Notes under the pieces: model-generated
What the model was told of the DNA's origin: nothing
Seen by the model: the letters and a program-made list of their open reading frames with translations, nothing else
The model's database searches: none
Origin: Zootoca vivipara
Lineage: Eukaryota
Direction: 5' to 3'
Length of the DNA: 64,000 nt
NCBI RefSeq assembly: GCF_963506605.1
Contig: NC_083277.1
Span: 94,798,001 to 94,862,000, forward strand
Shown here: piece by piece, positions 5,945-32,798 of the stretch
Layout: every line of letters starts with the position of its first letter
Position numbering within the stretch: position 1 is the first letter of the stretch
Translations under genes and position numbers: made by a program

Positions 5945-6961
5945 TTCCCCAGCAAGTGAGGTGATAATTATATGAAAAAATAAATTAAGAAGCTTTTATT
6001 CACGACTATTTCCCTTCTGTTAGTGTATTAAATACATTACAGATTATACTAAATAATTGGCTTCTGGAACATGTACAGCTACAATATTTAAATAGGTTTA
6101 AATTGACAGGCCATGTGACAGATACTTGCAGTGCAATAGCAAGTTTAAATAACTGTGCTTTAGTTGCACTTCCATCTCTTGCAACTTGGTTCACAGAGGT
6201 CGATAATAATGTATGTGTAATTTTTTTAAAGAATTCCTGGTTCTCATGTTCATAGACAGAAAATTTTAAATATGTTTGTTTTTACGATATTATAACAATG
6301 TCCTTTTTTTAACAGAAAAACTTCATCTTATTGAAAGTGTGCCTATCACCTGAAGAAGGGTGCAAATGGGACACTGATAATGCACATTAATAAGAAGTGG
6401 CTGTACTTTAGTGATAGAGCACATGCCTGGCATGAAGAAACTCTGAGATTCAGTCTCCAACCAAAGGACCAGATAGCAAGTGACAGGAAAGACCTCTACC
6501 TAAGACTCTGGAGAGCTGCTGCCATTAAAAATAATACCGGATCAGATAGGCCATCTGACTTTAAAGCAACTCCATGTGTTCATAAGGAGTAAAGCTGTGT
6601 GTGCACAGACCTGTCTTGATTTTTGCTTCATGGCATCTTTAAACATTCAGCCTCAATACTTGTCAATATACAGTTTTAAAGTTGTTTAAATGAACTACCA
6701 TATACAAATAATACAGTGGCTAGAGGCTCCCCTCTCCCTGTGGAACAGGTGCCAACTCTCTTGCGTTTTACTATTAGGATGACAAGTCCAGAGGTTAGAA
6801 ATTGAAATATAAGTAGGTCTCTATGGTATTTGAATTCCATAAAAATTATACTCTGTTGCTGAGAAATTCCTAGACCTTGACAAATGTATCAGTTTCTGTT
6901 GTTCTCACCTGGAAATAATGTTGCAACTTTACAATATGACAAAGGCCCTTGGGGCTGAAGA

Positions 6962-9900
6962 ATGAGCTTTTCTTGCATTAAGCTCAGTAAGATCTGCTTC
7001 CTGCTCTCGGTTATCTTTTGTGCAGTTCTCCTCTTGCTAATCCCCAAATTCCAGGCCATCTGGAAACCTAGAAGTTATCCACAGCCACAGCCACCACTTC
7101 TTTTTAATGGTTCCAGCAACAGTGACATCACTTTGCAGCAGGTGGAATCCAGTTCGATTGATCATTTGGATGATGAGGCTAGCAATATAGTGTCCTTGGT
7201 GAAAGAAGAACTGGTAGAAAAATGGAGTCACTATATCATAACCACTGGGAGATCTGGTCTGAAAGCTAACAGAAAGATGAATGACAGCCCAATTAATCAA
7301 TTGGACAATTTGATGAAAGACCATGTGGAACCTGCTTTAGTCTTTGCTAAGGAAAAGCTGAAGTTGAAGGATATCTTTATTGCTGTGAAAACAACAAGGA
7401 AGTACCATAGAACAAGGCTGAACTTGCTGTTCCAAACATGGATTTCTCAGGCTAAGGGGCAGGTAAGAACACTCCCCACCAAGCTAAAATACGAACTTGT
7501 TTAACACTGAAATCTCATAATCTCTCATCAGGTATAATTCATAGAACTTATTCAGAGACCACATGAGGAGGGCCATGGGGCCATGCAACCTAATCTTACC
7601 CACATCAGTAACATATCAGGCTACCATGCCATCTGGATATTCAGCATGCATGAGAAGGGACTGTGTGGGTAAACTGGCATACATGTGTGTAGAGATCTTC
7701 TATGTGAGGTGGGGGATCTGAATGGAACGGAGCCTTCCTTGCATGGAGGATCTCTTATGTGCACATATAGATTATATAGGTTATATGCAAGGTATTCATG
7801 GGGAATGTTTTGATTGAATTTTTCCTGGATTGAGCAAAAACCTGCTTGTACAATGTTAGATGACATATTTGGTTCTCTCTCCACCAAATTAGGTAGCCAA
7901 ATGCTGTTTAAACTTCCACATAGGAAAGAGAGACTGATTTTTAGCTTGCTGGAAACCAGTAGAATGTCCTCTTGCTCAATGTTCAGACTAAAACTAACAT
8001 TAGTGTTACTTCAAAATCTTCAGGATATGAAGTCTTTCTTTGTTGTTTTCCATGTTTCCCACAGACATTTATATTCACAGACTGGGATGATCAGGAGCTA
8101 CGTCTCAGGGCAGGTAAGCTGCTTTCCAAATTTCTGAAAGTTGTAACAGATTTATATTTATAGGTGACACATGTTAAGGAAAGTTGCTGTCTTTCTAGGA
8201 AAGGGACAGTAGCTCAGTGATAGAGCATGTTTTGTGTGCAGTACATCCCAGGTTCCATCCTTTGCATCTCCAGTTTTTTAAAAAGGGGATATAAAGTAGC
8301 AGGGAATATAAAAGACCCCTACCTGAGTAAACCATAGTTGCTTCCCCACTGCTGCATGGTCTGAATTCTGCTTTGCCTGTATCAGATGTCTACACAATCC
8401 ACACTGAATATTACCCAGAGCATTTCTTCATATGCAAGCCCTACTGCATTTGTTATCTCTCTTACAAATCATGCATATTCCCCTGTTTTAATCATTTTTA
8501 TTTTATAGGGGACCATGTAATCAATACCAACTGCTCAGCTGTTCACACTCGCCAAGCTCTCTGCTGCAAGATGTCCGTGGAATATGATAAATTCCTGGAG
8601 TCTGGGCGAAAGTAAGTGAGAGTCACTATTTCCATTGGTGCCTATTTTTTAATTCTCCTTTCTGGCATCAGTGAGTTAGCATGAGCTACCTCCAGCACAA
8701 CTGATGAGCATAAAAGAAACCAAATTTGTCTGAAAGGATGAGTAGCATATCAAGATACTGACTTCTGATCTAACTTTCTTCAGTTGAGAAGAGCTTCTCT
8801 ACTTTTGCCTTCTCAGATTGTGGCCTCAATTGCCTTTTCATGGTTGTGATTCTGTGAGGTGGACACCTTCACCAAAGAAACCCTGGTAGAAAGGGCCATC
8901 TTGGGACCTCCTCTGTGTCTCTCCATGTCTTTTTTGTGTGTTTTTTTGCAGGTGGTTTTGTCATGTGGATGATGATAACTATGTGAACCTGCACAATCTC
9001 CTGCATCTCCTGTCTGCTTTTTCACACAGCCAAGATATATATGTGGGGAGACCAAGCCTAGACCATCCAATTGAAGCAGCAGACCATGTTCGGAATGACG
9101 GATCAGTGAGCATGTCCTATAATTGAATCTCTGTTATCTCAAACTGAACAAATCAGATTCTTGCACTCACTATGTATTCCTCACTTAAATTTCCTGGAAG
9201 TCCTCCCCCTTCTTTTCTATTTACAGCCAGGCTTTCCCATCCCATTCCAGAATGTGACTTGGGAACACTTTCCCAACACATACGGTGCACAGGAAATTTT
9301 CTGCAGCCTCTTCCACTCAGAGTTAGACCCTTTCTTAGATCCCATTATCTTATCCTATACTACACTGAGATGGCAGTAGAGGGATGTGGTGTGTCATCTG
9401 TAATTCAGCTGATACTCTCGATTTGCTCACATCCCCCTGCAGTCTAAATATGATATCTTTGTAAATTATACCCGGAGGGTTGCCAGGTTCAGATGCAAGA
9501 GACATAATTTCCACCCCTCTCTTCATATACCTAAGTAAGAACAGCTACCTAAGTAAGAATTTGTGAAGCAATAATTATATGACTTCTGCTGCTTCCTGGC
9601 TCATCGCTACTCTGGGATGGAAAATCACCTTACAGAGGCGCTTTAGGAAAGTAGGCACCTTCCTCTGCTTGCAGATTCTGTCCTTCAAATCCATGCTTCA
9701 TCCTTGTTGTGCTGTCGCATTGTGCTGCTCTTCAGGATTATGTGAGCAGTATGCCTGGGATAGCTCATTTGATAAAGCAAGAGACCCTTAATCTCAGAGT
9801 TGTGGGTTTGAGCCCCACCCTGGGCAAAATATTCCTGCATTGCAGGGGGTTTGACTTGATGTCCCTTGTGGTCCCTTCCAACTGTTGAGAGTGTTTGGAT

Positions 9901-11564
9901 TTGGAGATCAAACAATGTAAGAGTTCCTGGTGCATGGATAGGATCTGACTTACCCAGGTGACCAAAAAGCTGACAGAAATATTGTTTGTTTATCTTGGTA
10001 GACCACTGCAAAGTTCTGGTTTGCCACAGGTGGTGCAGGGTTCTGCATCAGCAGAGGTCTTGCCCTCAAGATGAGCCCCTGGGCTAGGTATGTGCTACTT
10101 GGACAATTTGCTCTTATTTTCTGCTGCCTTACTAGAATCTAGAAGATTTCATTCTCTGATTTATTGCCTTTTGACAGCCTAGGAAGCTTCATCAGCACTG
10201 CAGAGAGAATTCGACTTCCTGATGACTGCACCATTGGTTACATTATTGAGGGGCTGTTGGAGGTGAAACTCTTGCGCAGCCCCTTGTTCCACTCTCATCT
10301 GGAAAACTTGCAGCAGCTGCGTGGCGAAGCTGTGCTGAAACAGGTATGGACAAATCTTCCTTAATCCATGCAGATATCTCTTCCGCTTGCCTGTCCATCA
10401 AAATAGATACATGTTTGTGGATTTGTGGCTGAAGCTATTTTAAGAGTCTGGTGTGTGTAACGATTTATAAAAGCAATACATATGCCTTTTCCAAAGGCTT
10501 GCCACAACCATGGAAAAACCAAGAAGGGGGAAATTATGGAAAAGAAGTATATCTCTACACACACTTAAACAACATACACAAATATGGATATTATTATTAT
10601 TATTATTATTATAATTGGAGGTGAGGAAAGCCTTGAGGGCCTGAAAGTGGTGCAGTGAATAAAAGCAGGGAACGCCACTGAACTTCGGAGCAGGCTTCGA
10701 AGAGGCATTTACAAGTGGTAGTTACACCTCTGCTAACAGAATGGAGAAATGGAATGAATGAACAAGCAGGATGTAAGGATATCTAGTGCAGGAGAGGGGT
10801 TGTGAAATATAATAGTATTGGTGGTTTGATAAGCCCTAAATTCAGGTCTTGTGTGGTTTGATGGTTTTGCTACATAATCTTTCTGAAGTCCTAGCAGGTG
10901 AAAGTAAGGGGCAGGAACTCTAATGACCTGCTTCATCCTGGTCTTCTTCATTCTGGGGAAAATATGCTCCTTTTGACACATCTGGTCTGAGCCTAAGCTA
11001 TGTTTGCATTAACCTGAGTAGCAGATAGGGATTGCTCACCAGCAACTTATTTGTTAACCATTTATTTTTACATGATTTCTGCTATTTGTCTTGGAAATAC
11101 CACAAGGCCACTGTCCCTCCCCTGCCACTTCTGCATTTGCCAACTTTTTATTCTGGTATTGCTTGCCACACTCTGGCAAGTGCAGTTTCTAAGCACATGT
11201 TTCCCCCCGCTGTCAGGTTACCTTGAGTTATGGTGGTCCTGAGAACAGGCGCAACGTTGTAAGCGTGGGTGAAGTGTTCAGTATACAGCAAGACCCAACT
11301 CGGTGCGTATGTAACCATTTTTCAAGTGAAATCAATTTGACTAATAAATCCAAGCACAAGAATAAGAAATGGCATTTCTTTGCCAGCAAAATATACTGTC
11401 AAGTTATGGCCAATGTCCCTGCACTGGTGGCTTTGTATATTTCAGGCCAAGTTGTGTTAACTCCTCTGACAGTTTCTAATTTTCTTTCTATTTGCAGATT
11501 CAAATCTGTCCACTGTCTCCTCTACCCTGACACTGGATGGTGCCCCAGTCTAATAGTGAACTGA
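6962..11564 (+). CDS. RFNG: Radical fringe beta-1,3-N-acetylglucosaminyltransferase, 8 coding exons, 403 aa
   Basis: Exons 6962-7462, 8065-8113, 8509-8611, 8952-9105, 10002-10087, 10178-10343, 11217-11302, 11498-11564; all GT-AG, in frame, 1212 nt. Type II TM N-terminus; motifs [47 protein letters not shown]. Synteny with GPS1 and DCXR. Confidence 0.96.
8203..8330 (+). mobile_element. Degenerate tRNA-derived SINE (Squam3-like); similar remnants near 6400-6590 and 32165-32300
   Basis: A-box-like GTAGCTCAGTGATAGAGCAT and B-box-like CCCAGGTTCCATCC followed by a non-tRNA body. Confidence 0.55.
9757..9882 (+). mobile_element. tRNA-Lys-derived SINE with CR1 3' tail
   Basis: Head GATAGCTC..CTTAATCTCAG.GT.GTGGGTT.GAGCCCCAC..TGGGC plus tail TTCCTGCATTGCAGGGGGTT.GAC..GATG.CCCTTGTGGTCCCTTCCAACT; other copies at 14127 and 19240. 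Confidence 0.8.
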
Positions 11565-14126: not shown

Positions 14127-14264
14127 AGTATAGCTCAGTTGTTAGAGCATGAGGCCCTTAATCTCAGGGTCATGGGTTTGAGACCCACATTGAGCAAAAG
14201 ATTCCTACATTGCAGGGGGTTGGATTAGGTGACCCTTGTGTTCCTTTCCAACTCTATGATTCTA
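14127..14264 (+). mobile_element. tRNA-Lys/CR1-tail SINE
   Basis: Same structure as the 9757 copy; ends CTCTATGATTCTA. Confidence 0.8.
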
Positions 14265-15550
14265 ATGGCTTTTGATAAACACCACAGTTCTTAAAGTTTT
14301 AGTAGAGTAAAATGAGTCAAGTCTGCAACTAGCTGTGATGTCTGATTGAGCGTCAGCAAAGGCTTGAAGATGGTTTTGAGGCACAGGAGAATAAACTCAA
14401 GCCCTGCAGTGCATAAGGTGGTGGTGTCAGCTTTCCAGACTTAATTGAGACCTTAAGATCTTCTGCTTTGTTCACATGCACTTCTTTGACAATTTAGCCA
14501 TGCTCAATTTGCTTATGTGCAAATTTTCGCTTTGAGCAAATGATGTTGGCACTTTCTGGTTTAGCAACTACCACATTTCTTTTCTAGAAAATGAATCTAA
14601 AAAATAAAGTGTTTCACTGACTCTGCTTTCATTCTGAGTTGCTGTACCATGTTTTTGAATGGTATTCAGGACCTAGTTAATACTGTATACATGCATCCTC
14701 ATAATGGGTCCCTGCTGAAAACATGCATTTAATACATTTTCCCTATCTAAAATGCAATATTAGAATAAACCTACATGCTGATTATCTGAGAGATTGTAAG
14801 CATTTCAAAACCTTTTAAATGTATGTCTAAGAATTTAGAATGGTTCACATTCCAGTGCTTAATTTTAACGGGGGAAATGTTTGTTTAGAAACAACCAGTG
14901 CCTCTTGCTGTGACCCAGTCACCCTGACCATGTGATAATAGTATTAATCTAATGTCTCAGGAATGGTTTTTTCAAACGGTTTGACAAAGGTGATTCAACT
15001 CTTAAGCTCTGCAAAAGTATTTTGCACAAAGTACCATGCTGAATTGGTTCCTTCCAGCATTAACTAAAGCCATAACACAATGTTTACCTATCTCTCTGTG
15101 TGTTTGTTTGTTTACCTATCTCTGAACATTCTCCACAGTATATGTCTTAACACACTGAAAGATACCAGTCTGTTCTGCCAATTTCTTCTAGGTGTTGCCA
15201 GGAGTTTATCTGAAGCATGTGTTTCATCTACTCTCAAGCGGGGAGTAGTAAATGGCACGGAGAAGAGGATCAGGGTGCGATGGCAAGATTTAATTTTTTT
15301 TGTTAGTCCCTAGCATTACATAATATCCTGTAAGATTTAAACCTTTACAGCAGTACAGCCAAAGTGCATTAGGAATGGGCTATTATTTCTAGCAGGGACA
15401 CCTGCCTTTAAATTAGTCATCTATGGAACGGGTCTGGTACCTGGCAAATGTAATACAAAGGCTACAAGGAGTCTGTATTGCTGCTGCTCGTCATTGGATT
15501 CTATGGTTCATTTCAGTGTGGTTAAAATGCCAGTTTCAGGACTCTAGTTG

Positions 15551-16294
15551 TTAGCCTTCAAGCTCTCCCCCGTTGCTCTCCTCCTGCTGTGGTTGGGTAC
15601 CAGTCCACTGCACAATGTTGTCCCTCAGGTGCTGCATGATGACTGTAGATTCCTTGTAATACTCTAGGCTGAGAGTCTCCAGTCCAGCGATTGCCTTATC
15701 GAACGCAGCCTTGGCCAGTTTGGTTGCCTGCTGAGGGTTGTTGAGAACCTCGTAATAAAGGATGGAGTAATTCAGAGCCAAAGCCAAAGCCAACGGATGA
15801 GTAGGTTCCAAATGCCACTGACTGATTTCCTGAGCCTCCCCATAAACTTTCTGCGCAGATTTCACAAGCGTCTCCTTCTCATCAGGCAGGGCCACCTCAG
15901 CTAAGAAGCGGTAGTTGTCCCCTTTCATCTTCAGGTAAAATGCCCGGCTTTCATAATCTGTGTCACTGCAGTGCTTCAGCAGTACATGGTCTAAGAGGCC
16001 GAGGATCTCCCAACACTCTGCTTCCAGCTCCTTCTTTATGGTCTCGCGGTAAGCTTGTGCTTGTTCCTTCTGCTTTCCAACCCCTTTCTCCACGGAGTGC
16101 TTTAGCCGTCGCCAAGAAGAGCACCGCTCCTGTGTTAGGAGCTTGTAGGCCTCAGAAAGCAGGGTCTTCTCCTCGTGGGTTAGTGGGTCTTTCCCTTCCA
16201 TCACAAGCTGCCTCATGGCAGTGGCCATCTCCTTGTACCTGCCACATTGTTCTGCTAGCTGTGCTGCCTGCACCAGCTGCTTGCGGCTCAACAT
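15551..16294 (-). CDS. Divergent intronless 14-3-3 protein (gamma/eta-type), probable retrogene, 247 aa
   Basis: Uninterrupted ATG-to-TAA ORF colinear with 14-3-3 along its full length (LAEQ.GRY, LLS.AYK, SSWR, FYLKMKGD.YR.LAEVA, PTHP..L.LALNYS..YYE, AFD.AIA.L.TL, ST.IMQ.LRDN...WT). The CSDTDYES loop and ALNYS motif are gamma-like. Confidence 0.9.
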   Translation of the reverse strand: MLSRKQLVQAAQLAEQCGRYKEMATAMRQLVMEGKDPLTHEEKTLLSEAYKLLTQERCSSWRRLKHSVEKGVGKQKEQAQAYRETIKKELEAECWEILGLLDHVLLKHCSDTDYESRAFYLKMKGDNYRFLAEVALPDEKETLVKSAQKVYGEAQEISQWHLEPTHPLALALALNYSILYYEVLNNPQQATKLAKAAFDKAIAGLETLSLEYYKESTVIMQHLRDNIVQWTGTQPQQEESNGGELEG

Positions 16295-17135
16295 TGACAG
16301 GGAGAGGCCAGCAGTCGCAGACTGGCCTGAATGGGCCAGGGGGAGATTCCAGCTGTGTGGCAGGCAGCAAGTGATGTCACAGGGACAGGAATGTTCTGGA
16401 ATGTTCCGAAGCAGCCAATTTTATTTCCACAAAAAGCTGGGTGGTAGATTAACAGGGATCCTGCTGCCTTTAGAGTAGGAAATTCTGTCAAGTGACAGGC
16501 CTCAAGTAGCACGTCATCTGTTGTGTTTGGAAATGCGGTGTGATGTCCCAACACAAGTGTTACAGAATCAAAACACAGACGATGATCAAAAGGTGTCACG
16601 GCACAATCGCACGAAATGTGGGTTAGTAAAGATATGCCAGCCTTGTTACTAAGGTCTCGAAAGTTACCGGGGCCTTTCTTACAACTAAAAAGTAGGCTGG
16701 TGAAGAATAGCAGGCTAGAAGCATAGCTGGCAGGCAAAGTAGAAAAACACTGTCACCAGTCTGCTGTGTTTGTGGAGGCTGCAGAGGCGGCTTCACTTCC
16801 TCCCCATCCCAGCTAATTTCCACACTGACTATGGAGGACATGACTCCCTGTCCTCCAAATATGGAAGCTGAGTCACTTCACAAAGGTGAAACGACACTCT
16901 GTCCCTCCTCGCCTATGTGGAATTCCTGGTCACCAGTGGTGACCAAGGAGGGCTTTATCAGTTGCACCCACCCTGCTTACAGAATTTGCTCCTAATGGAG
17001 GCTCACCTGGGCCCTATATTGATGCATGTTTGCTTGTGTTGTGAACCCCTTCTGAGATCCATGGATGGAGGGCAGTATAGATATTTAATGAAGGTAATAG
17101 TTCTTTATTATTAAGTTTAAATTAAACAATATTGT

Positions 17136-17440
17136 ATGTTACAGGTAGGTAGCCGTGTTGGTCTGGGTCGAAGTAAAATAAAAAAATTCTTTCAGTAGCA
17201 CCTTAAAGACCAACTAAGTTTTTATTTTGGTATGAGCTTTCGTGTGCATGCACACTTCTTCAGATACAGTGAAATGGGAGTCCCCAGGCACTTATGTAGA
17301 GAAGGGGTGGGGAGGGGTGGGGATGGGGAGTGGGGATTACTCAGAAGGGTGGTGGAAATGGGTGATTGACTGACTGATAGCTGTTGATGACCGAAAACGA
17401 CTGCAAATGGTTTTGCATGAAAAAGCAAGGGTTGAGATTG
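17136..17440 (-). mobile_element. Penelope-like element terminal fragment
   Basis: GGTAGCCGTGTTGGTCTG...GTAGCACCTTAAAGACCAACT...GTATGAGCTTTCGTG...CACTTCTTCAGATAC resembles vertebrate PLE pLTR sequence and contains a hammerhead core. Confidence 0.7.
17230..17267 (-). ncRNA. Minimal type I hammerhead ribozyme motif (PLE-associated)
   Basis: Minus strand GUAU-CUGAAGA-A-GUGUGC AU GCACAC-GAAA-GC-UC-AUAC: stem I GUAU/AUAC, CUGANGA box, perfect stem II, GAAA box, palindromic AGCU mini stem III, CUC cleavage triplet. Confidence 0.75.
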
Positions 17441-18695: not shown

Positions 18696-23445
<4,750 letters not shown>

Positions 23446-24577: not shown

Positions 24578-30732
<6,155 letters not shown>

Positions 30733-31588
30733 CTAGCCCCGGCAGCGAGACGGGCTGCGATGGCGGCGGCGGCGGCGGGCGCCGGGCTCCGTGTGCTTCG
30801 TCTTCTTTGGCGATGGATGCCGCCCGCAGCCGCAGTGAACGAGAGAGAGAGAGGGAGGGAGGGAGGGAGGGAGGAGAGGGAGCGAGCCAGAGAGAGAGAG
30901 AGACCCGGGCGGGGCCAGGGAAGGAGGAGGAGGAGGCAGCGTGGGAGTCCTGTGGCCCCTCCCTGCCACCCCTGGACTCGCGTCGGCGGAGCCGTGTGGA
31001 AGGAAGCGGGGCAGCGCGGAGGGACCTTGCAGGAGATGCCCAGATCTTAGGACCCAGCAAACGCCTCCGAGCTTGGGAGCAACCCGCGGTAGCTTAGCAA
31101 CTGACTGGTGCACTGCCTGGTGGCGCCTGGGACAGCAGGCAGCCAACACCGTCGGCGACAGGGAGGGGTGGGGAGATGGTCAGAATCGGGCCCTTTGCAA
31201 TCACAGCATCGTAGAACCCGGGAGTTGGAAGGGGTCCCCCGAGGGTCGTCTAGTCCAACCCCCTGCAGTGCAGGAATCGCAGCTACAGAATCCCTCCAAC
31301 CCACCTCTGTTTAGAAACTTCCAGTGAAGGAGAGCCCTGCACCTGCAGAGGCAGCTCCTTCTAGTCTAGTAGTTATTTGCTGCCTGCATTTATGCCCTGT
31401 CTGCCTTTTCTGCCAAGGCGCTCCAGATCCTGGAAGAATAGGAGTGGAGCTCTGGCTGGGTCACAGCAAAGGTTCATTCTGGTCTCCCAGTGGCCAGTCA
31501 GGCACCCATAAGATGCCCCGTAGCAGGGCATGGCCTCAATAGCATTGGCCCCACTCTTGTTCAAGTGGCAGACTACCACCACCTCCAA

Positions 31589-31689
31589 CATAGGCATAGC
31601 CAGGATTGGGAAGGGGGAGCAGAACCTCAGTTAAGTATTTTGTATTAGTTTACTTGATTTACCCCCTGCCCCCCTTGGCTACTCCCATG
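31589..31689. mobile_element. ~101-bp hAT-type MITE
   Basis: Imperfect TIR CATAGGCATAGCCA / TGGCTACTCCCATG; perfect 8-bp TSD ACCTCCAA. Confidence 0.75.
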
Positions 31690-32798
31690 ACCTCCAATGC
31701 TAGTCATACCAGTATTCTGCTGGCACCATGTTATCCTCACAAGAAGCCTGCGAAGTAGGTGGGGCTGAGAAAGTGTGACTGGCCCAAGGTCACCCCATGA
31801 GAACTTAATGGCTGAGTGGAAATTTGAACCCTGGGTTCTCTAGCCCTTACTCCAAGAGGTGGGCAAATATGTGAGTTTGGATGACCATCTGTCATAGATG
31901 CTTTAGCTGAGATTCCTGCTGATGAGAGCTGGATCCCAACATTACCTGGAGGATCAGAAGTGCCCTATCCCTGTGGGGAGTCAAACACTGCAACCACTAC
32001 ATTACCCTAGGGGGTTGGCACTTTTCTGCTGGCATGGCCACTGCGCCTTTAATGTCTACAACAGTCTGATGCTGCTGTTTATCTTCTGCGTCAGAGTGAA
32101 GTAATTGTTATGTGTGCGCAGTATGGTTATTCTGTTGTGAACCACCCTGTGGCCACATATAAAGGGCTGTGGCTCAGATCTGCTTTGTGTGGAAAAGGTC
32201 CAAGATTTACTCACTGGCATCCCCAAGGTTGGGCTGGGAATGTCTTCTGCCTGAAATCCTAGAGAGCTGCTGCCTGCCAGTGTTGGCAATACTGAGCTAC
32301 AAGGCTGTGTCTTGTATTCTTTAGGGATGCAATGGCAAAGCTTCAGCTGTAGAGTTTCTATCTGTGATGAAGCCAAGGTGTTTTTACTCCCCAGCCAGAA
32401 CTTGATGTTCCGGCACTTCTCAGGTAGGCGCCGTTGCCATTATAAGAGAATGAGGGAGGTGTCCATGGTGAGTTCTGGCACCTCTTTTTCTAGAAAAATA
32501 GCACTAGATCATGTAGCCATTAGTGTCTCAAGGGGAAGTGACAGTCCTGCACTGCAAGTGTAACTCTGTGGCTATGGTCAGTAACTTGTTTTACAGAGCT
32601 ACTTAGAGGGCATCCTGTCTAATGGGATGAAAGAGGCCAGGTTAGCACTTAAGTCCCATTACTGCAGTAACCAGCCTTTCAGTGCATCTCTGGAGTGGCA
32701 GAGGCAGGTCTGGAACTTCCCGTTGTTGGTTCCTCCTAAATTGTGACCAGGTGAGGAATTGTGATTTGAAGCCTCAGTCCTCCATCAGGCAGCTATAT

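What the first reader, a model, noticed from the sequence alone, without database searches (positions are those of the whole stretch)
15551..16294. Intact, highly diverged intronless 14-3-3 gene with a remodelled phosphopeptide groove
Seen: a complete 247-codon ORF with no stops or frameshifts despite heavy divergence, in a family that is normally near-invariant. It lies between RFNG and DCXR, where the human block has no 14-3-3 gene. Known: phosphoserine is held by K49/R56/R127/Y128 (zeta numbering). Here K49 and R127 remain, but R56 is Cys (C58, codon 16123-16121) and Y128 is Phe (F130, codon 15907-15905). The invariant KNVVGARR reads KLLTQERC. Groove residues change too (G169->A, L220->H, L227->Q), as do dimer-interface charges (K85->T, E87->K), while N173, E180, N224 and W228 are kept. 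The gamma-like CSxTxYES and ALNYS motifs and the lack of the YWHAG coding intron point to a retrocopy. Inference: an additional vertebrate 14-3-3 kept under selection as a phospho-independent binder, chaperone or dominant-negative heterodimer partner.
Basis: partly seen in the sequence, partly recalled or inferred. Interest (0 to 1): 0.85.

Follow-up and report, generated by a model that had tools for sequence, protein, structure and literature searches.

The report
Squamate-only divergent 14-3-3 gamma retrogene
Lizards and snakes carry an extra, intronless copy of the 14-3-3 gamma signalling adaptor that has stayed intact under selection since before geckos split from other squamates, although one of its key phosphate-binding arginines is replaced by cysteine, the same change that causes a human epilepsy syndrome when it arises in the normal gene.

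Summary
The ORF at 15551-16294 (-) is real, intact and a full-length 14-3-3 (Pfam E 3.5e-73; nine-helix model, TM 0.90-0.94 to human gamma).

It is not a pseudogene. Full-length orthologues occur in 13 squamate species of nine families, from gecko to python (73-98% identity). The clade has 100/100 support and nests inside gamma. Its stem is about 1.4 changes per site; crown branches are short. Among lacertids dN/dS is 0.12-0.21, dS matches the 3'UTR rate, and all indels lie in the UTR. cDNA contigs of two relatives cover only ORF plus short UTRs. Two RNA runs of the window's own species show no reads, so expression is not ubiquitous.

- R56->Cys is invariant (13/13).
- Y128->Phe is confined to lacertids and one skink.
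- K49 is Thr in gecko and Anolis.
- No non-squamate orthologue was found.
- The groove is not significantly more changed than the rest of the protein (p 0.15).

The same change, gamma Arg57Cys, is a human disease hotspot.

The gene is auto-annotated "14-3-3 gamma-like" in RefSeq. No paper describing it was found. Its biochemical role is inferred, not shown.

The parts
15551..16294 (-). Single-exon coding sequence (247 codons plus TAA) of the divergent gamma-derived 14-3-3
   Evidence: Pfam 14-3-3 E 3.5e-73; no indels against relatives; omega 0.12-0.21
16121..16123 (-). Codon 58, TGC = Cys, at the position of zeta R56 / gamma R57 in the phosphate-binding triad
   Evidence: Cys in 13 of 13 squamate orthologues against Arg in 20 of 20 canonical sequences; human gamma Arg57Cys is a pathogenic hotspot
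16142..16144 (-). Codon 51, Lys (zeta K49); kept here, but Thr in the gecko and Anolis orthologues
15905..15910 (-). Codons 129-130, Arg-Phe (zeta R127-Y128). Arg is invariant in the clade. Phe occurs only in lacertids and Lerista; the other seven species have Tyr
15314..15550 (-). 3' untranslated region as covered by cDNA contigs of two related species. A genomic A8 run follows at about 15295-15302
   Evidence: contig ends at 15314 and 15341; 4.3-5.5% substitutions; all indels are here
16295..16349 (-). Minimal 5' untranslated region (the contig of relative A reaches 16349). The start codon has a weak context (tcaATGt)
6959..11561 (+). Neighbouring Fringe-family glycosyltransferase gene (RFNG-like), tail-to-tail with the 14-3-3 gene
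   Evidence: Pfam Fringe on four exon segments; exon list; the RFNG assignment rests on synteny and recalled motifs only
18696..23442 (+). Neighbouring DCXR (L-xylulose reductase) gene, head-to-head with the 14-3-3 gene; the two ATGs are 2.4 kb apart
   Evidence: splice joint 18742->18833 (GT..AG) in RNA reads

Best explanation
This is a functional, protein-coding gene confined to squamates. It most likely arose by retroposition of a 14-3-3 gamma (YWHAG) mRNA into the Fringe-DCXR interval before the last common ancestor of living lizards and snakes.

After a burst of change on the stem lineage it has been held under purifying selection as a nine-helix 14-3-3 fold. It keeps R127, R60, N173, E180, W228 and the core dimer contacts (L12, E14, R18-E89, S58, Y82). 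It has permanently lost R56 of the phosphate-binding triad (Cys in every species) and has replaced many groove residues (N50L/F, G53Q, I166L, R167A, G169A, L220H/R/C/N, L227Q).

It is transcribed from its own proximal promoter, and not in all tissues.

Inferred mechanism: a 14-3-3 with weakened or absent phosphoserine recognition. It either binds clients in another way through the retained part of the groove, or pairs with canonical isoforms to make dimers with only one working phospho-site.

Shown here: origin from gamma, age, selection, transcription and fold. Inferred only: ligand mode and dimer partners.
For: - Intact ORF and 14-3-3 domain.
- Orthologues of 242-248 aa in Lacertidae (5 species), Varanidae, Anguidae, Cordylidae, Scincidae, Sphaerodactylidae, Pythonidae, Boidae and Dactyloidae, with no internal indels before the C-terminal tail.
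- Tree: clade 100/100, inside gnathostome gamma 97/93, apart from Gekko, human, turtle and bird gamma (96/85). Stem 1.36-1.41 changes per site against crown tips of 0.03-0.29.
- Of 44 canonically invariant positions that changed, 30 are fixed in at least 12 of 13 species.
- omega = 0.21, 0.18 and 0.12 in three lacertid comparisons. About 9 of 21 pooled events are nonsynonymous, against 78% expected if neutral (binomial p 4.5e-4). dS of 0.055-0.068 is close to the 3'UTR rate of 0.043-0.055. All five indel events lie in the UTR.
- Transcription: contigs of relatives A and C cover only 15314-16349 and 15341-16156, at depth 198-324, with zero depth on the unique flanks. In the same run (X13) a 1,394-nt contig touches only DCXR exon 2, so the run is spliced cDNA.
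- Fold: pLDDT 90.7, nine helices, TM 0.90-0.94 and 1.3-1.5 A rmsd to human gamma.
- R56C in 13 of 13 species. Human gamma Arg57Cys/Gly/His are recurrent pathogenic variants described as disrupting phospho-ligand binding, possibly in a dominant-negative way (PMC12394150).
Against: - No biochemical data. K49 (11 of 13 species), R127 (13 of 13), Y128 (7 of 13, otherwise Phe) and R60 (13 of 13) remain, so some phosphopeptide affinity may survive.
- The groove is not significantly more changed than other conserved positions (12/28 against 32/106, p 0.15), so the remodelling is not specific to the groove.
- Two RNA-seq runs of the window's own species had no reads on the ORF, while DCXR was detected at depth 1-11. 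The tissues are unknown.
- The runs that do hold the transcript are labelled RNA only by a guess. I showed splicing for X13 but not for X1.
- The hits include no colubroid snake, agamid or Gekko orthologue. That may mean lineage losses or only missing annotation.
- The retroposition hallmarks are erased: no convincing target-site duplications.
- The coding intron of the parental gene is taken from my own knowledge and was not verified here.
Confidence: 0.62

Rival explanations
1. A functional paralogue that is still an ordinary phosphoserine/threonine adaptor. The remaining K49, R127, Y128/F and R60 would suffice, and the changes would merely shift client specificity or affinity.
For: R127 and R60 are invariant and K49 is kept in 11 of 13 species. 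N173, E180, D223 and W228, which hold the peptide backbone, are invariant. The groove is not preferentially changed. The fold is unchanged.
Against: R56 is Cys in all 13 species. Anolis additionally lacks K49 and R55, and the gecko lacks K49. Substitutions at this same arginine in human gamma (Arg57Cys/Gly/His) are pathogenic and are described as compromising phospho-ligand binding. The hydrophobic wall residues L220 and L227 have become polar.
Confidence: 0.25
2. A physiological dominant-negative subunit. It would heterodimerise with canonical 14-3-3s in the tissue where it is expressed, giving dimers with one dead site that blunt bivalent client clamping.
For: Core dimer contacts are retained (L12, E14, R18-E89, S58, Y82, K74 in 13 of 13 species). 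Human ligand-site missense variants, including Arg57Cys, are reported as worse than truncations, which suggests dominant-negative action through dimers. Restricted expression would limit the harm.
Against: The interface charges are altered (A16C, E17G, D20K, K85T, E87K). This could equally favour homodimers, as in sigma. The only dimer prediction gave no verdict, and heterodimers were not tested. The 60 positions that are invariant in the new clade but variable in canonical proteins suggest a positive function of its own rather than mere site loss.
Confidence: 0.2
3. A decaying processed pseudogene whose open frame survives by chance in this species.
For: The gene is intronless and strongly diverged from its parent. 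No reads were found in two RNA runs of the window's own species. The start-codon context is weak.
Against: Full-length ORFs occur in 13 species spanning crown Squamata with no internal indels. omega is 0.12-0.21 with p < 0.001 against neutrality. All indels are confined to the UTR, and cDNA contigs exist in relatives. Changes are fixed across the clade.
Confidence: 0.02

Closest known systems
14-3-3 gamma (YWHAG), the canonical vertebrate isoform
   Same: Best sequence and structure match (264 bits; TM 0.90-0.94). Same length of 247 aa. Gamma-type motifs CSxTxYES and ALNYS. The clade nests inside gamma.
   Different: Only 55.8% identical, whereas gamma itself is 98% identical between gecko and human. 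Different locus. No coding intron. R57C and about 43 other changes at canonically invariant positions. A loop between helices 3 and 4 that is shorter by 4-5 residues. It evolves roughly ten times faster than gamma. It coexists with a canonical gamma in squamates (Gekko gamma).
Human YWHAG Arg57Cys (DEE56 disease variant) and engineered R56/R57 mutants
   Same: The identical residue change at the identical triad position. The engineered R57E mutant is used as a phospho-recognition-defective gamma.
   Different: In humans it is a de novo, deleterious change in the essential gene. Here it is fixed in an extra copy across all sampled squamates, together with many other substitutions.
14-3-3 sigma (SFN)
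   Same: A lineage-restricted, faster-evolving 14-3-3 paralogue with tissue-restricted expression and altered dimer-interface residues (my own knowledge of sigma).
   Different: Sigma keeps the complete K49/R56/R127/Y128 set and binds phosphopeptides. It arose by gene or genome duplication, not retroposition. The squamate gene derives from gamma.
Human YWHAZ processed pseudogenes
   Same: 14-3-3 copies derived from mRNA (PMC11049341).
   Different: Those are mostly disabled or of uncertain function, and human YWHAG has none. The squamate copy is intact, selected and old.

Membership tests
14-3-3 family (Pfam PF00244) | Full-length match to the family profile | tested here: met
   E 3.5e-73, 246 bits against a cut-off of 33.2, profile positions 2-223 of 223
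14-3-3 family (Pfam PF00244) | Nine antiparallel helices forming the cup-shaped monomer | tested here: met
   AlphaFold2 pLDDT 90.7, nine helices; TM 0.90-0.94 and rmsd 1.3-1.5 A to human gamma structures
14-3-3 family (Pfam PF00244) | Phosphate-binding set K49/R56/R127/Y128 (zeta numbering) | tested here: not met
   R56 is Cys in 13 of 13 species; K49 is Thr in 2 of 13; Y128 is Phe in 6 of 13; only R127 is invariant. All four are invariant in 20 canonical sequences
14-3-3 family (Pfam PF00244) | Conserved amphipathic groove residues that hold the peptide backbone and side chains | tested here: inconclusive
   Kept: R60, F117, D124, P165, L172, N173, E180, I217, D223, W228. Changed: N42, V46, N50, G53, I166, R167, G169, V176, L216, L220, L227. 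The residue list comes from my knowledge of the published structures
14-3-3 family (Pfam PF00244) | Dimerisation through the N-terminal helices | tested here: inconclusive
   L12, E14, R18, S58, K74, Y82 and E89 are kept in 13 of 13 species, but A16C, E17G, D20K, K85T and E87K are changed. The homodimer prediction gave no verdict
YWHAG orthologue (true gamma isoform) | Groups with gamma of the same taxa and shares gamma's near-invariance | tested here: not met
   It derives from gamma (97/93), but Gekko gamma groups with human, turtle and bird gamma (96/85) to the exclusion of this clade. 55.8% identity against 98.4% among true gammas
Processed retrogene | Coding sequence without the parental intron, at a new locus | tested here: met
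   Uninterrupted ORF aligned end to end with gamma, lying between a Fringe gene and DCXR. That YWHAG has a coding intron is from my own knowledge and was not verified here
Processed retrogene | Poly(A) remnant and target-site duplications | tested here: inconclusive
   An A8 run follows just after the transcript's 3' end. The only flanking direct repeat is 22 nt at 77% identity and is probably chance. Erasure is expected at this age
Functional (selected) gene rather than pseudogene | dN/dS well below 1, intact orthologues, transcription | tested here: met
   omega 0.12-0.21, p 4.5e-4; 13 intact orthologues; cDNA contigs

The most novel reading that the evidence does not exclude
Squamates carry an eighth, naturally "phospho-blind" 14-3-3. 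Selection has kept the fold, the dimer core and the part of the groove that in gamma recognises O-GlcNAc (N178 invariant, V181 mostly Ile). It has permanently removed the R57 phosphate clamp. The protein would then act in a specific tissue as a reader of a non-phosphate mark or motif, or as a built-in modulator that turns canonical dimers into one-site dimers. The human disease allele Arg57Cys would be its accidental mimic.
Probability: 0.3. Interest if true: 0.8.

Novelty: new variant of a known kind. Interest (0 to 1): 0.64.

Why it matters
14-3-3 proteins are among the most conserved eukaryotic signalling adaptors, and the vertebrate set is usually taken as seven isoforms.

Here an extra paralogue is restricted to one lineage. 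It changed very fast once and was then held constant since before the gecko split. One residue of the phosphate clamp is replaced by the very substitution that is a hotspot for a human epileptic encephalopathy.

This offers a natural experiment on what a 14-3-3 fold can do without full phosphate recognition. It may also show how cells tolerate, or make use of, a subunit that could be dominant-negative. It is also a clean example of a retrogene that outlived its neutral phase.

In practice, automatic pipelines label it "gamma" or "gamma-like", which could mislead isoform-level analyses in reptiles.

Tried and rejected
Orthologue DNA, deep-branch dN/dS and synteny in other squamates could not be obtained. 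I replaced this with substitutions read from the contigs of two relatives.
- **Homodimer prediction**: no verdict. The score was 0.65 but one unrelated control scored 0.60. It is not used as evidence for or against dimerisation. Heterodimers were not tried because the cap was one job.
- **Groove enrichment test**: not significant (p 0.15). I dropped the idea that change is focused on the groove.
- **Target-site duplications**: only a 22-nt repeat at 77% identity, treated as chance. No canonical AATAAA lies upstream of the contig ends.
- **Literature searches** for a described reptile paralogue found nothing. The femoral-gland proteomics paper concerns 14-3-3 sigma.
- **Unavailable or unhelpful sources:** the primary O-GlcNAc structure paper (PMC6003352) is not held. 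A search for YWHAG exon structure gave nothing usable.
- **The search of earlier findings:** The notes by place concerned unrelated repeats.
- **Shared bidirectional promoter or 5' exon with DCXR:** rejected for now. There is no contig or read cover between 16360 and 17095 or between 17464 and 18567, and the contig of relative A ends 55 nt upstream of the ATG.

Full report
**Observation.** The window holds an uninterrupted 247-codon ORF at 15551-16294 on the minus strand. It matches the whole Pfam 14-3-3 profile (E 3.5e-73). Its best solved relatives are human 14-3-3 gamma (264 bits), then eta (247) and zeta (226). Identity to human gamma is 55.8%, whereas canonical gamma is 98.4% identical between a gecko and human. 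The divergence is therefore exceptional for this family.

**Surroundings.** Upstream in window coordinates lies a Fringe-family gene on the plus strand. Its exon segments are at 6959-7501, 8331-8612, 8890-9123, 10002-10139, 10143-10361 and about 11193-11561, and four of the five submitted to Pfam hit Fringe at E 1e-11 to 1e-20. Downstream lies DCXR on the plus strand, with its ATG at about 18696 and last exon ending at 23442. One 52-residue exon hits human L-xylulose reductase at E 8.7e-24. RNA reads show the exon 1-2 joint 18742->18833 with GT..AG ends. The 14-3-3 gene is therefore tail-to-tail with the Fringe gene and head-to-head with DCXR, 2.4 kb between the ATGs. I did not formally show that the Fringe gene is RFNG. 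That rests on the known human DCXR-RFNG adjacency and on motifs I recall.

**Relatives.** A search of about 5.8 billion proteins returned full-length orthologues (242-248 aa) from Podarcis lilfordi (98%), Varanus, Elgaria, Hemicordylus, Lerista, the gecko Euleptes, Python, Candoia and Anolis sagrei (77-87%). Identity then drops to about 50% for canonical 14-3-3s. A profile of the ten sequences found the same set at 492-532 bits and then nothing until 285 bits. No tuatara, turtle, crocodilian, bird or mammal orthologue is among the annotated proteins. The window's exact protein is already in NCBI and UniRef. Its 90% cluster adds P. muralis, P. raffonei and Lacerta agilis, all auto-named "14-3-3 protein gamma(-like)". 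The window is thus from a lacertid lizard, and the gene occurs in nine squamate families, including Gekkota. That places its origin before the crown-squamate ancestor, roughly 200 million years ago or more by published timetrees (my knowledge). No colubroid snake, agamid or Gekko orthologue appeared.

**Phylogeny.** An IQ-TREE analysis (LG+C20 PMSF, 35 sequences) gives the squamate clade 100/100 support. It places the clade inside jawed-vertebrate gamma (97/93) and next to tetrapod gamma (84/77). Gekko gamma groups with human, turtle and bird gamma (96/85). The gene is therefore a gamma-derived paralogue that coexists with canonical gamma. The stem branch is 1.36-1.41 changes per site, against 0.03-0.29 for crown tips. 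Of 134 canonically (near-)invariant positions, 44 differ in the clade consensus, and 30 of those are fixed in at least 12 of 13 species. The pattern is a burst of change followed by a freeze. The stem is too long for neutral drift over the few tens of millions of years between the tuatara split and crown Squamata. Either the copy is older and was lost elsewhere, or adaptive change drove the burst. This remains open.

**Selection.** Contigs of two related species laid on the window give real substitutions. Nei-Gojobori estimates are omega 0.21 (window against A, full coding sequence), 0.18 (window against C) and 0.12 (A against C). dS is 0.055-0.068, close to the 3'UTR substitution rate of 0.043-0.055. 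Pooling events, about 9 of 21 are nonsynonymous where 78% would be expected under neutrality (binomial p 4.5e-4). All five indel events lie in the 3'UTR and none in the ORF. Together with 13 intact ORFs, this excludes a decaying pseudogene. The constraint is clearly looser than on canonical isoforms.

**Expression.**
- Fourteen small contig sets (38-129 million letters) from three related organisms in five studies hold 22-42% of the ORF's words. The 1.2-billion-letter sets of the window's own species hold all of them and are evidently genomic DNA.
- In X1 and X13 the contigs cover only 15314-16349 and 15341-16156, at depth 198-324. Depth is zero on the unique flanks (14336-15255, 16360-17095).
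- In X13 a 1,394-nt contig touches only 84 nt of DCXR exon 2, so it is spliced cDNA. The gene is therefore transcribed as a short mRNA of about 1 kb, with a 5' end at or just above 16349. That indicates its own proximal promoter rather than an exon shared with DCXR.
- Two raw RNA-seq runs of the window's own species (about 7.5 million reads sampled from each) had no read on the ORF, while DCXR had depth 1-11. Expression is not ubiquitous. The tissues are coded and unknown to me.

**Protein.**
- *Fold.* AlphaFold2 gives a confident nine-helix model (pLDDT 90.7, pTM 0.86). It superposes on human gamma at TM 0.90-0.94 and 1.3-1.5 A.
- *Phosphate set.* Across 13 squamate and 20 canonical sequences, R56 is Cys in 13 of 13. 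K49 is Lys in 11 and Thr in the gecko and Anolis. R127 is invariant. Y128 is Tyr in 7 and Phe in the five lacertids and Lerista.
- *Groove.* Changed: N42T, V46E, N50L/F, G53Q/R, I166L, R167A, G169A, V176I, L216V, L220H/R/C/N, L227Q/H. Invariant: R60, F117, D124, P165, L172, N173, E180, I217, D223, W228.
- *Dimer contacts.* L12, E14, R18, S58, K74, Y82 and E89 are invariant. A16C, E17G, D20K, K85T and E87K are changed.
- *Distribution of change.* The groove is not significantly more changed than other conserved positions (12/28 against 32/106, Fisher p 0.15). The divergence is protein-wide, not a targeted redesign of the groove.

**Link to what is known.** Gamma R57 (zeta R56) belongs to the Arg132-Arg57-Tyr133 triad. 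Arg57Cys, Arg57Gly and Arg57His are recurrent de novo variants in human DEE56. They are described as compromising phospho-ligand binding, and ligand-site missense variants are reported as more severe than truncations, which suggests dominant-negative action (PMC12394150). The squamate paralogue has fixed exactly Arg->Cys at this site. R57E is used as a phospho-recognition-defective gamma that still binds an O-GlcNAc-modified client, whereas N178 and V181 are assigned to O-GlcNAc recognition (PMC8988012; PDB 6BYJ and 6BZD). In the squamate clade N178 is invariant and V181 is mostly Ile. This is a lead, not a test. Human YWHAG has no pseudogenes in Ensembl release 111, unlike YWHAZ (PMC11049341). 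I found no paper describing this reptile paralogue.

**Verdict.** The retrocopy-under-selection reading is supported, with three corrections:
1. The gene is squamate-restricted.
2. Only R56C among the phosphate-set changes is clade-wide.
3. The biochemical role (phospho-independent binder, modulating heterodimer partner, or merely a shifted phospho-adaptor) is untested.

The homodimer prediction gave no verdict and is not evidence either way. I rate it a new variant of a known kind. Databases annotate it automatically, but I found no published description.

Noticed in passing
window 17138-17290 and 14159-14236: Short interspersed repeat copies with very high RNA depth in all four runs (up to about 1,900-2,600), many loose ends and strand-switch or "goes back" joints. 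This looks like a highly expressed SINE-like family and not part of the 14-3-3 gene.
   Followed up: no
window 16372-16379 (minus strand): A CRE-like octamer, TGACATCA, lies about 80 nt upstream of the ATG and about 25 nt upstream of the 5' end of the relative's cDNA contig. It is an untested lead for the promoter type.
   Followed up: no
window 15295-15302: A genomic run of eight A (transcript sense) lies directly after the cDNA contig ends (15314 and 15341), with no canonical AATAAA upstream. It could mark the cleavage region or be an A-rich remnant.
   Followed up: partly
window 22448-22990 (+), inside a DCXR intron: A 181-aa open frame that resembles the C-terminal part of a LINE ORF2 protein by eye, followed by an AAT-type microsatellite at about 23200-23275. 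A transposon insertion in the DCXR intron; not checked against Pfam.
   Followed up: no
window 30000-32000: A GC-rich island (60% GC) with several overlapping long frames on both strands. Probably the CpG-island promoter or first exon of another gene.
   Followed up: no
protein P0189 (Podarcis muralis, UniProt A0A670J1D3): A second odd 14-3-3 model of 267 aa with non-homologous ends. Its core looks theta-like (KNVVGGRRSAWR). Possibly a retropseudogene or a mis-modelled YWHAQ.
   Followed up: no
hit lists: The orthologue set contains henophidian snakes (Python, Candoia) but no colubroid snake, and Anolis sagrei but no agamid or phrynosomatid, although many such genomes are annotated. This may mean lineage-specific losses.
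   Followed up: no
window 15551-16294, lineage-specific changes: The window's species has four amino-acid states (E22, K70, E139, L172) not shared by relatives A and C, Podarcis or Lacerta agilis. Its two RNA runs also show no expression. Slightly relaxed constraint in this species cannot be excluded, but the numbers are small.
   Followed up: partly
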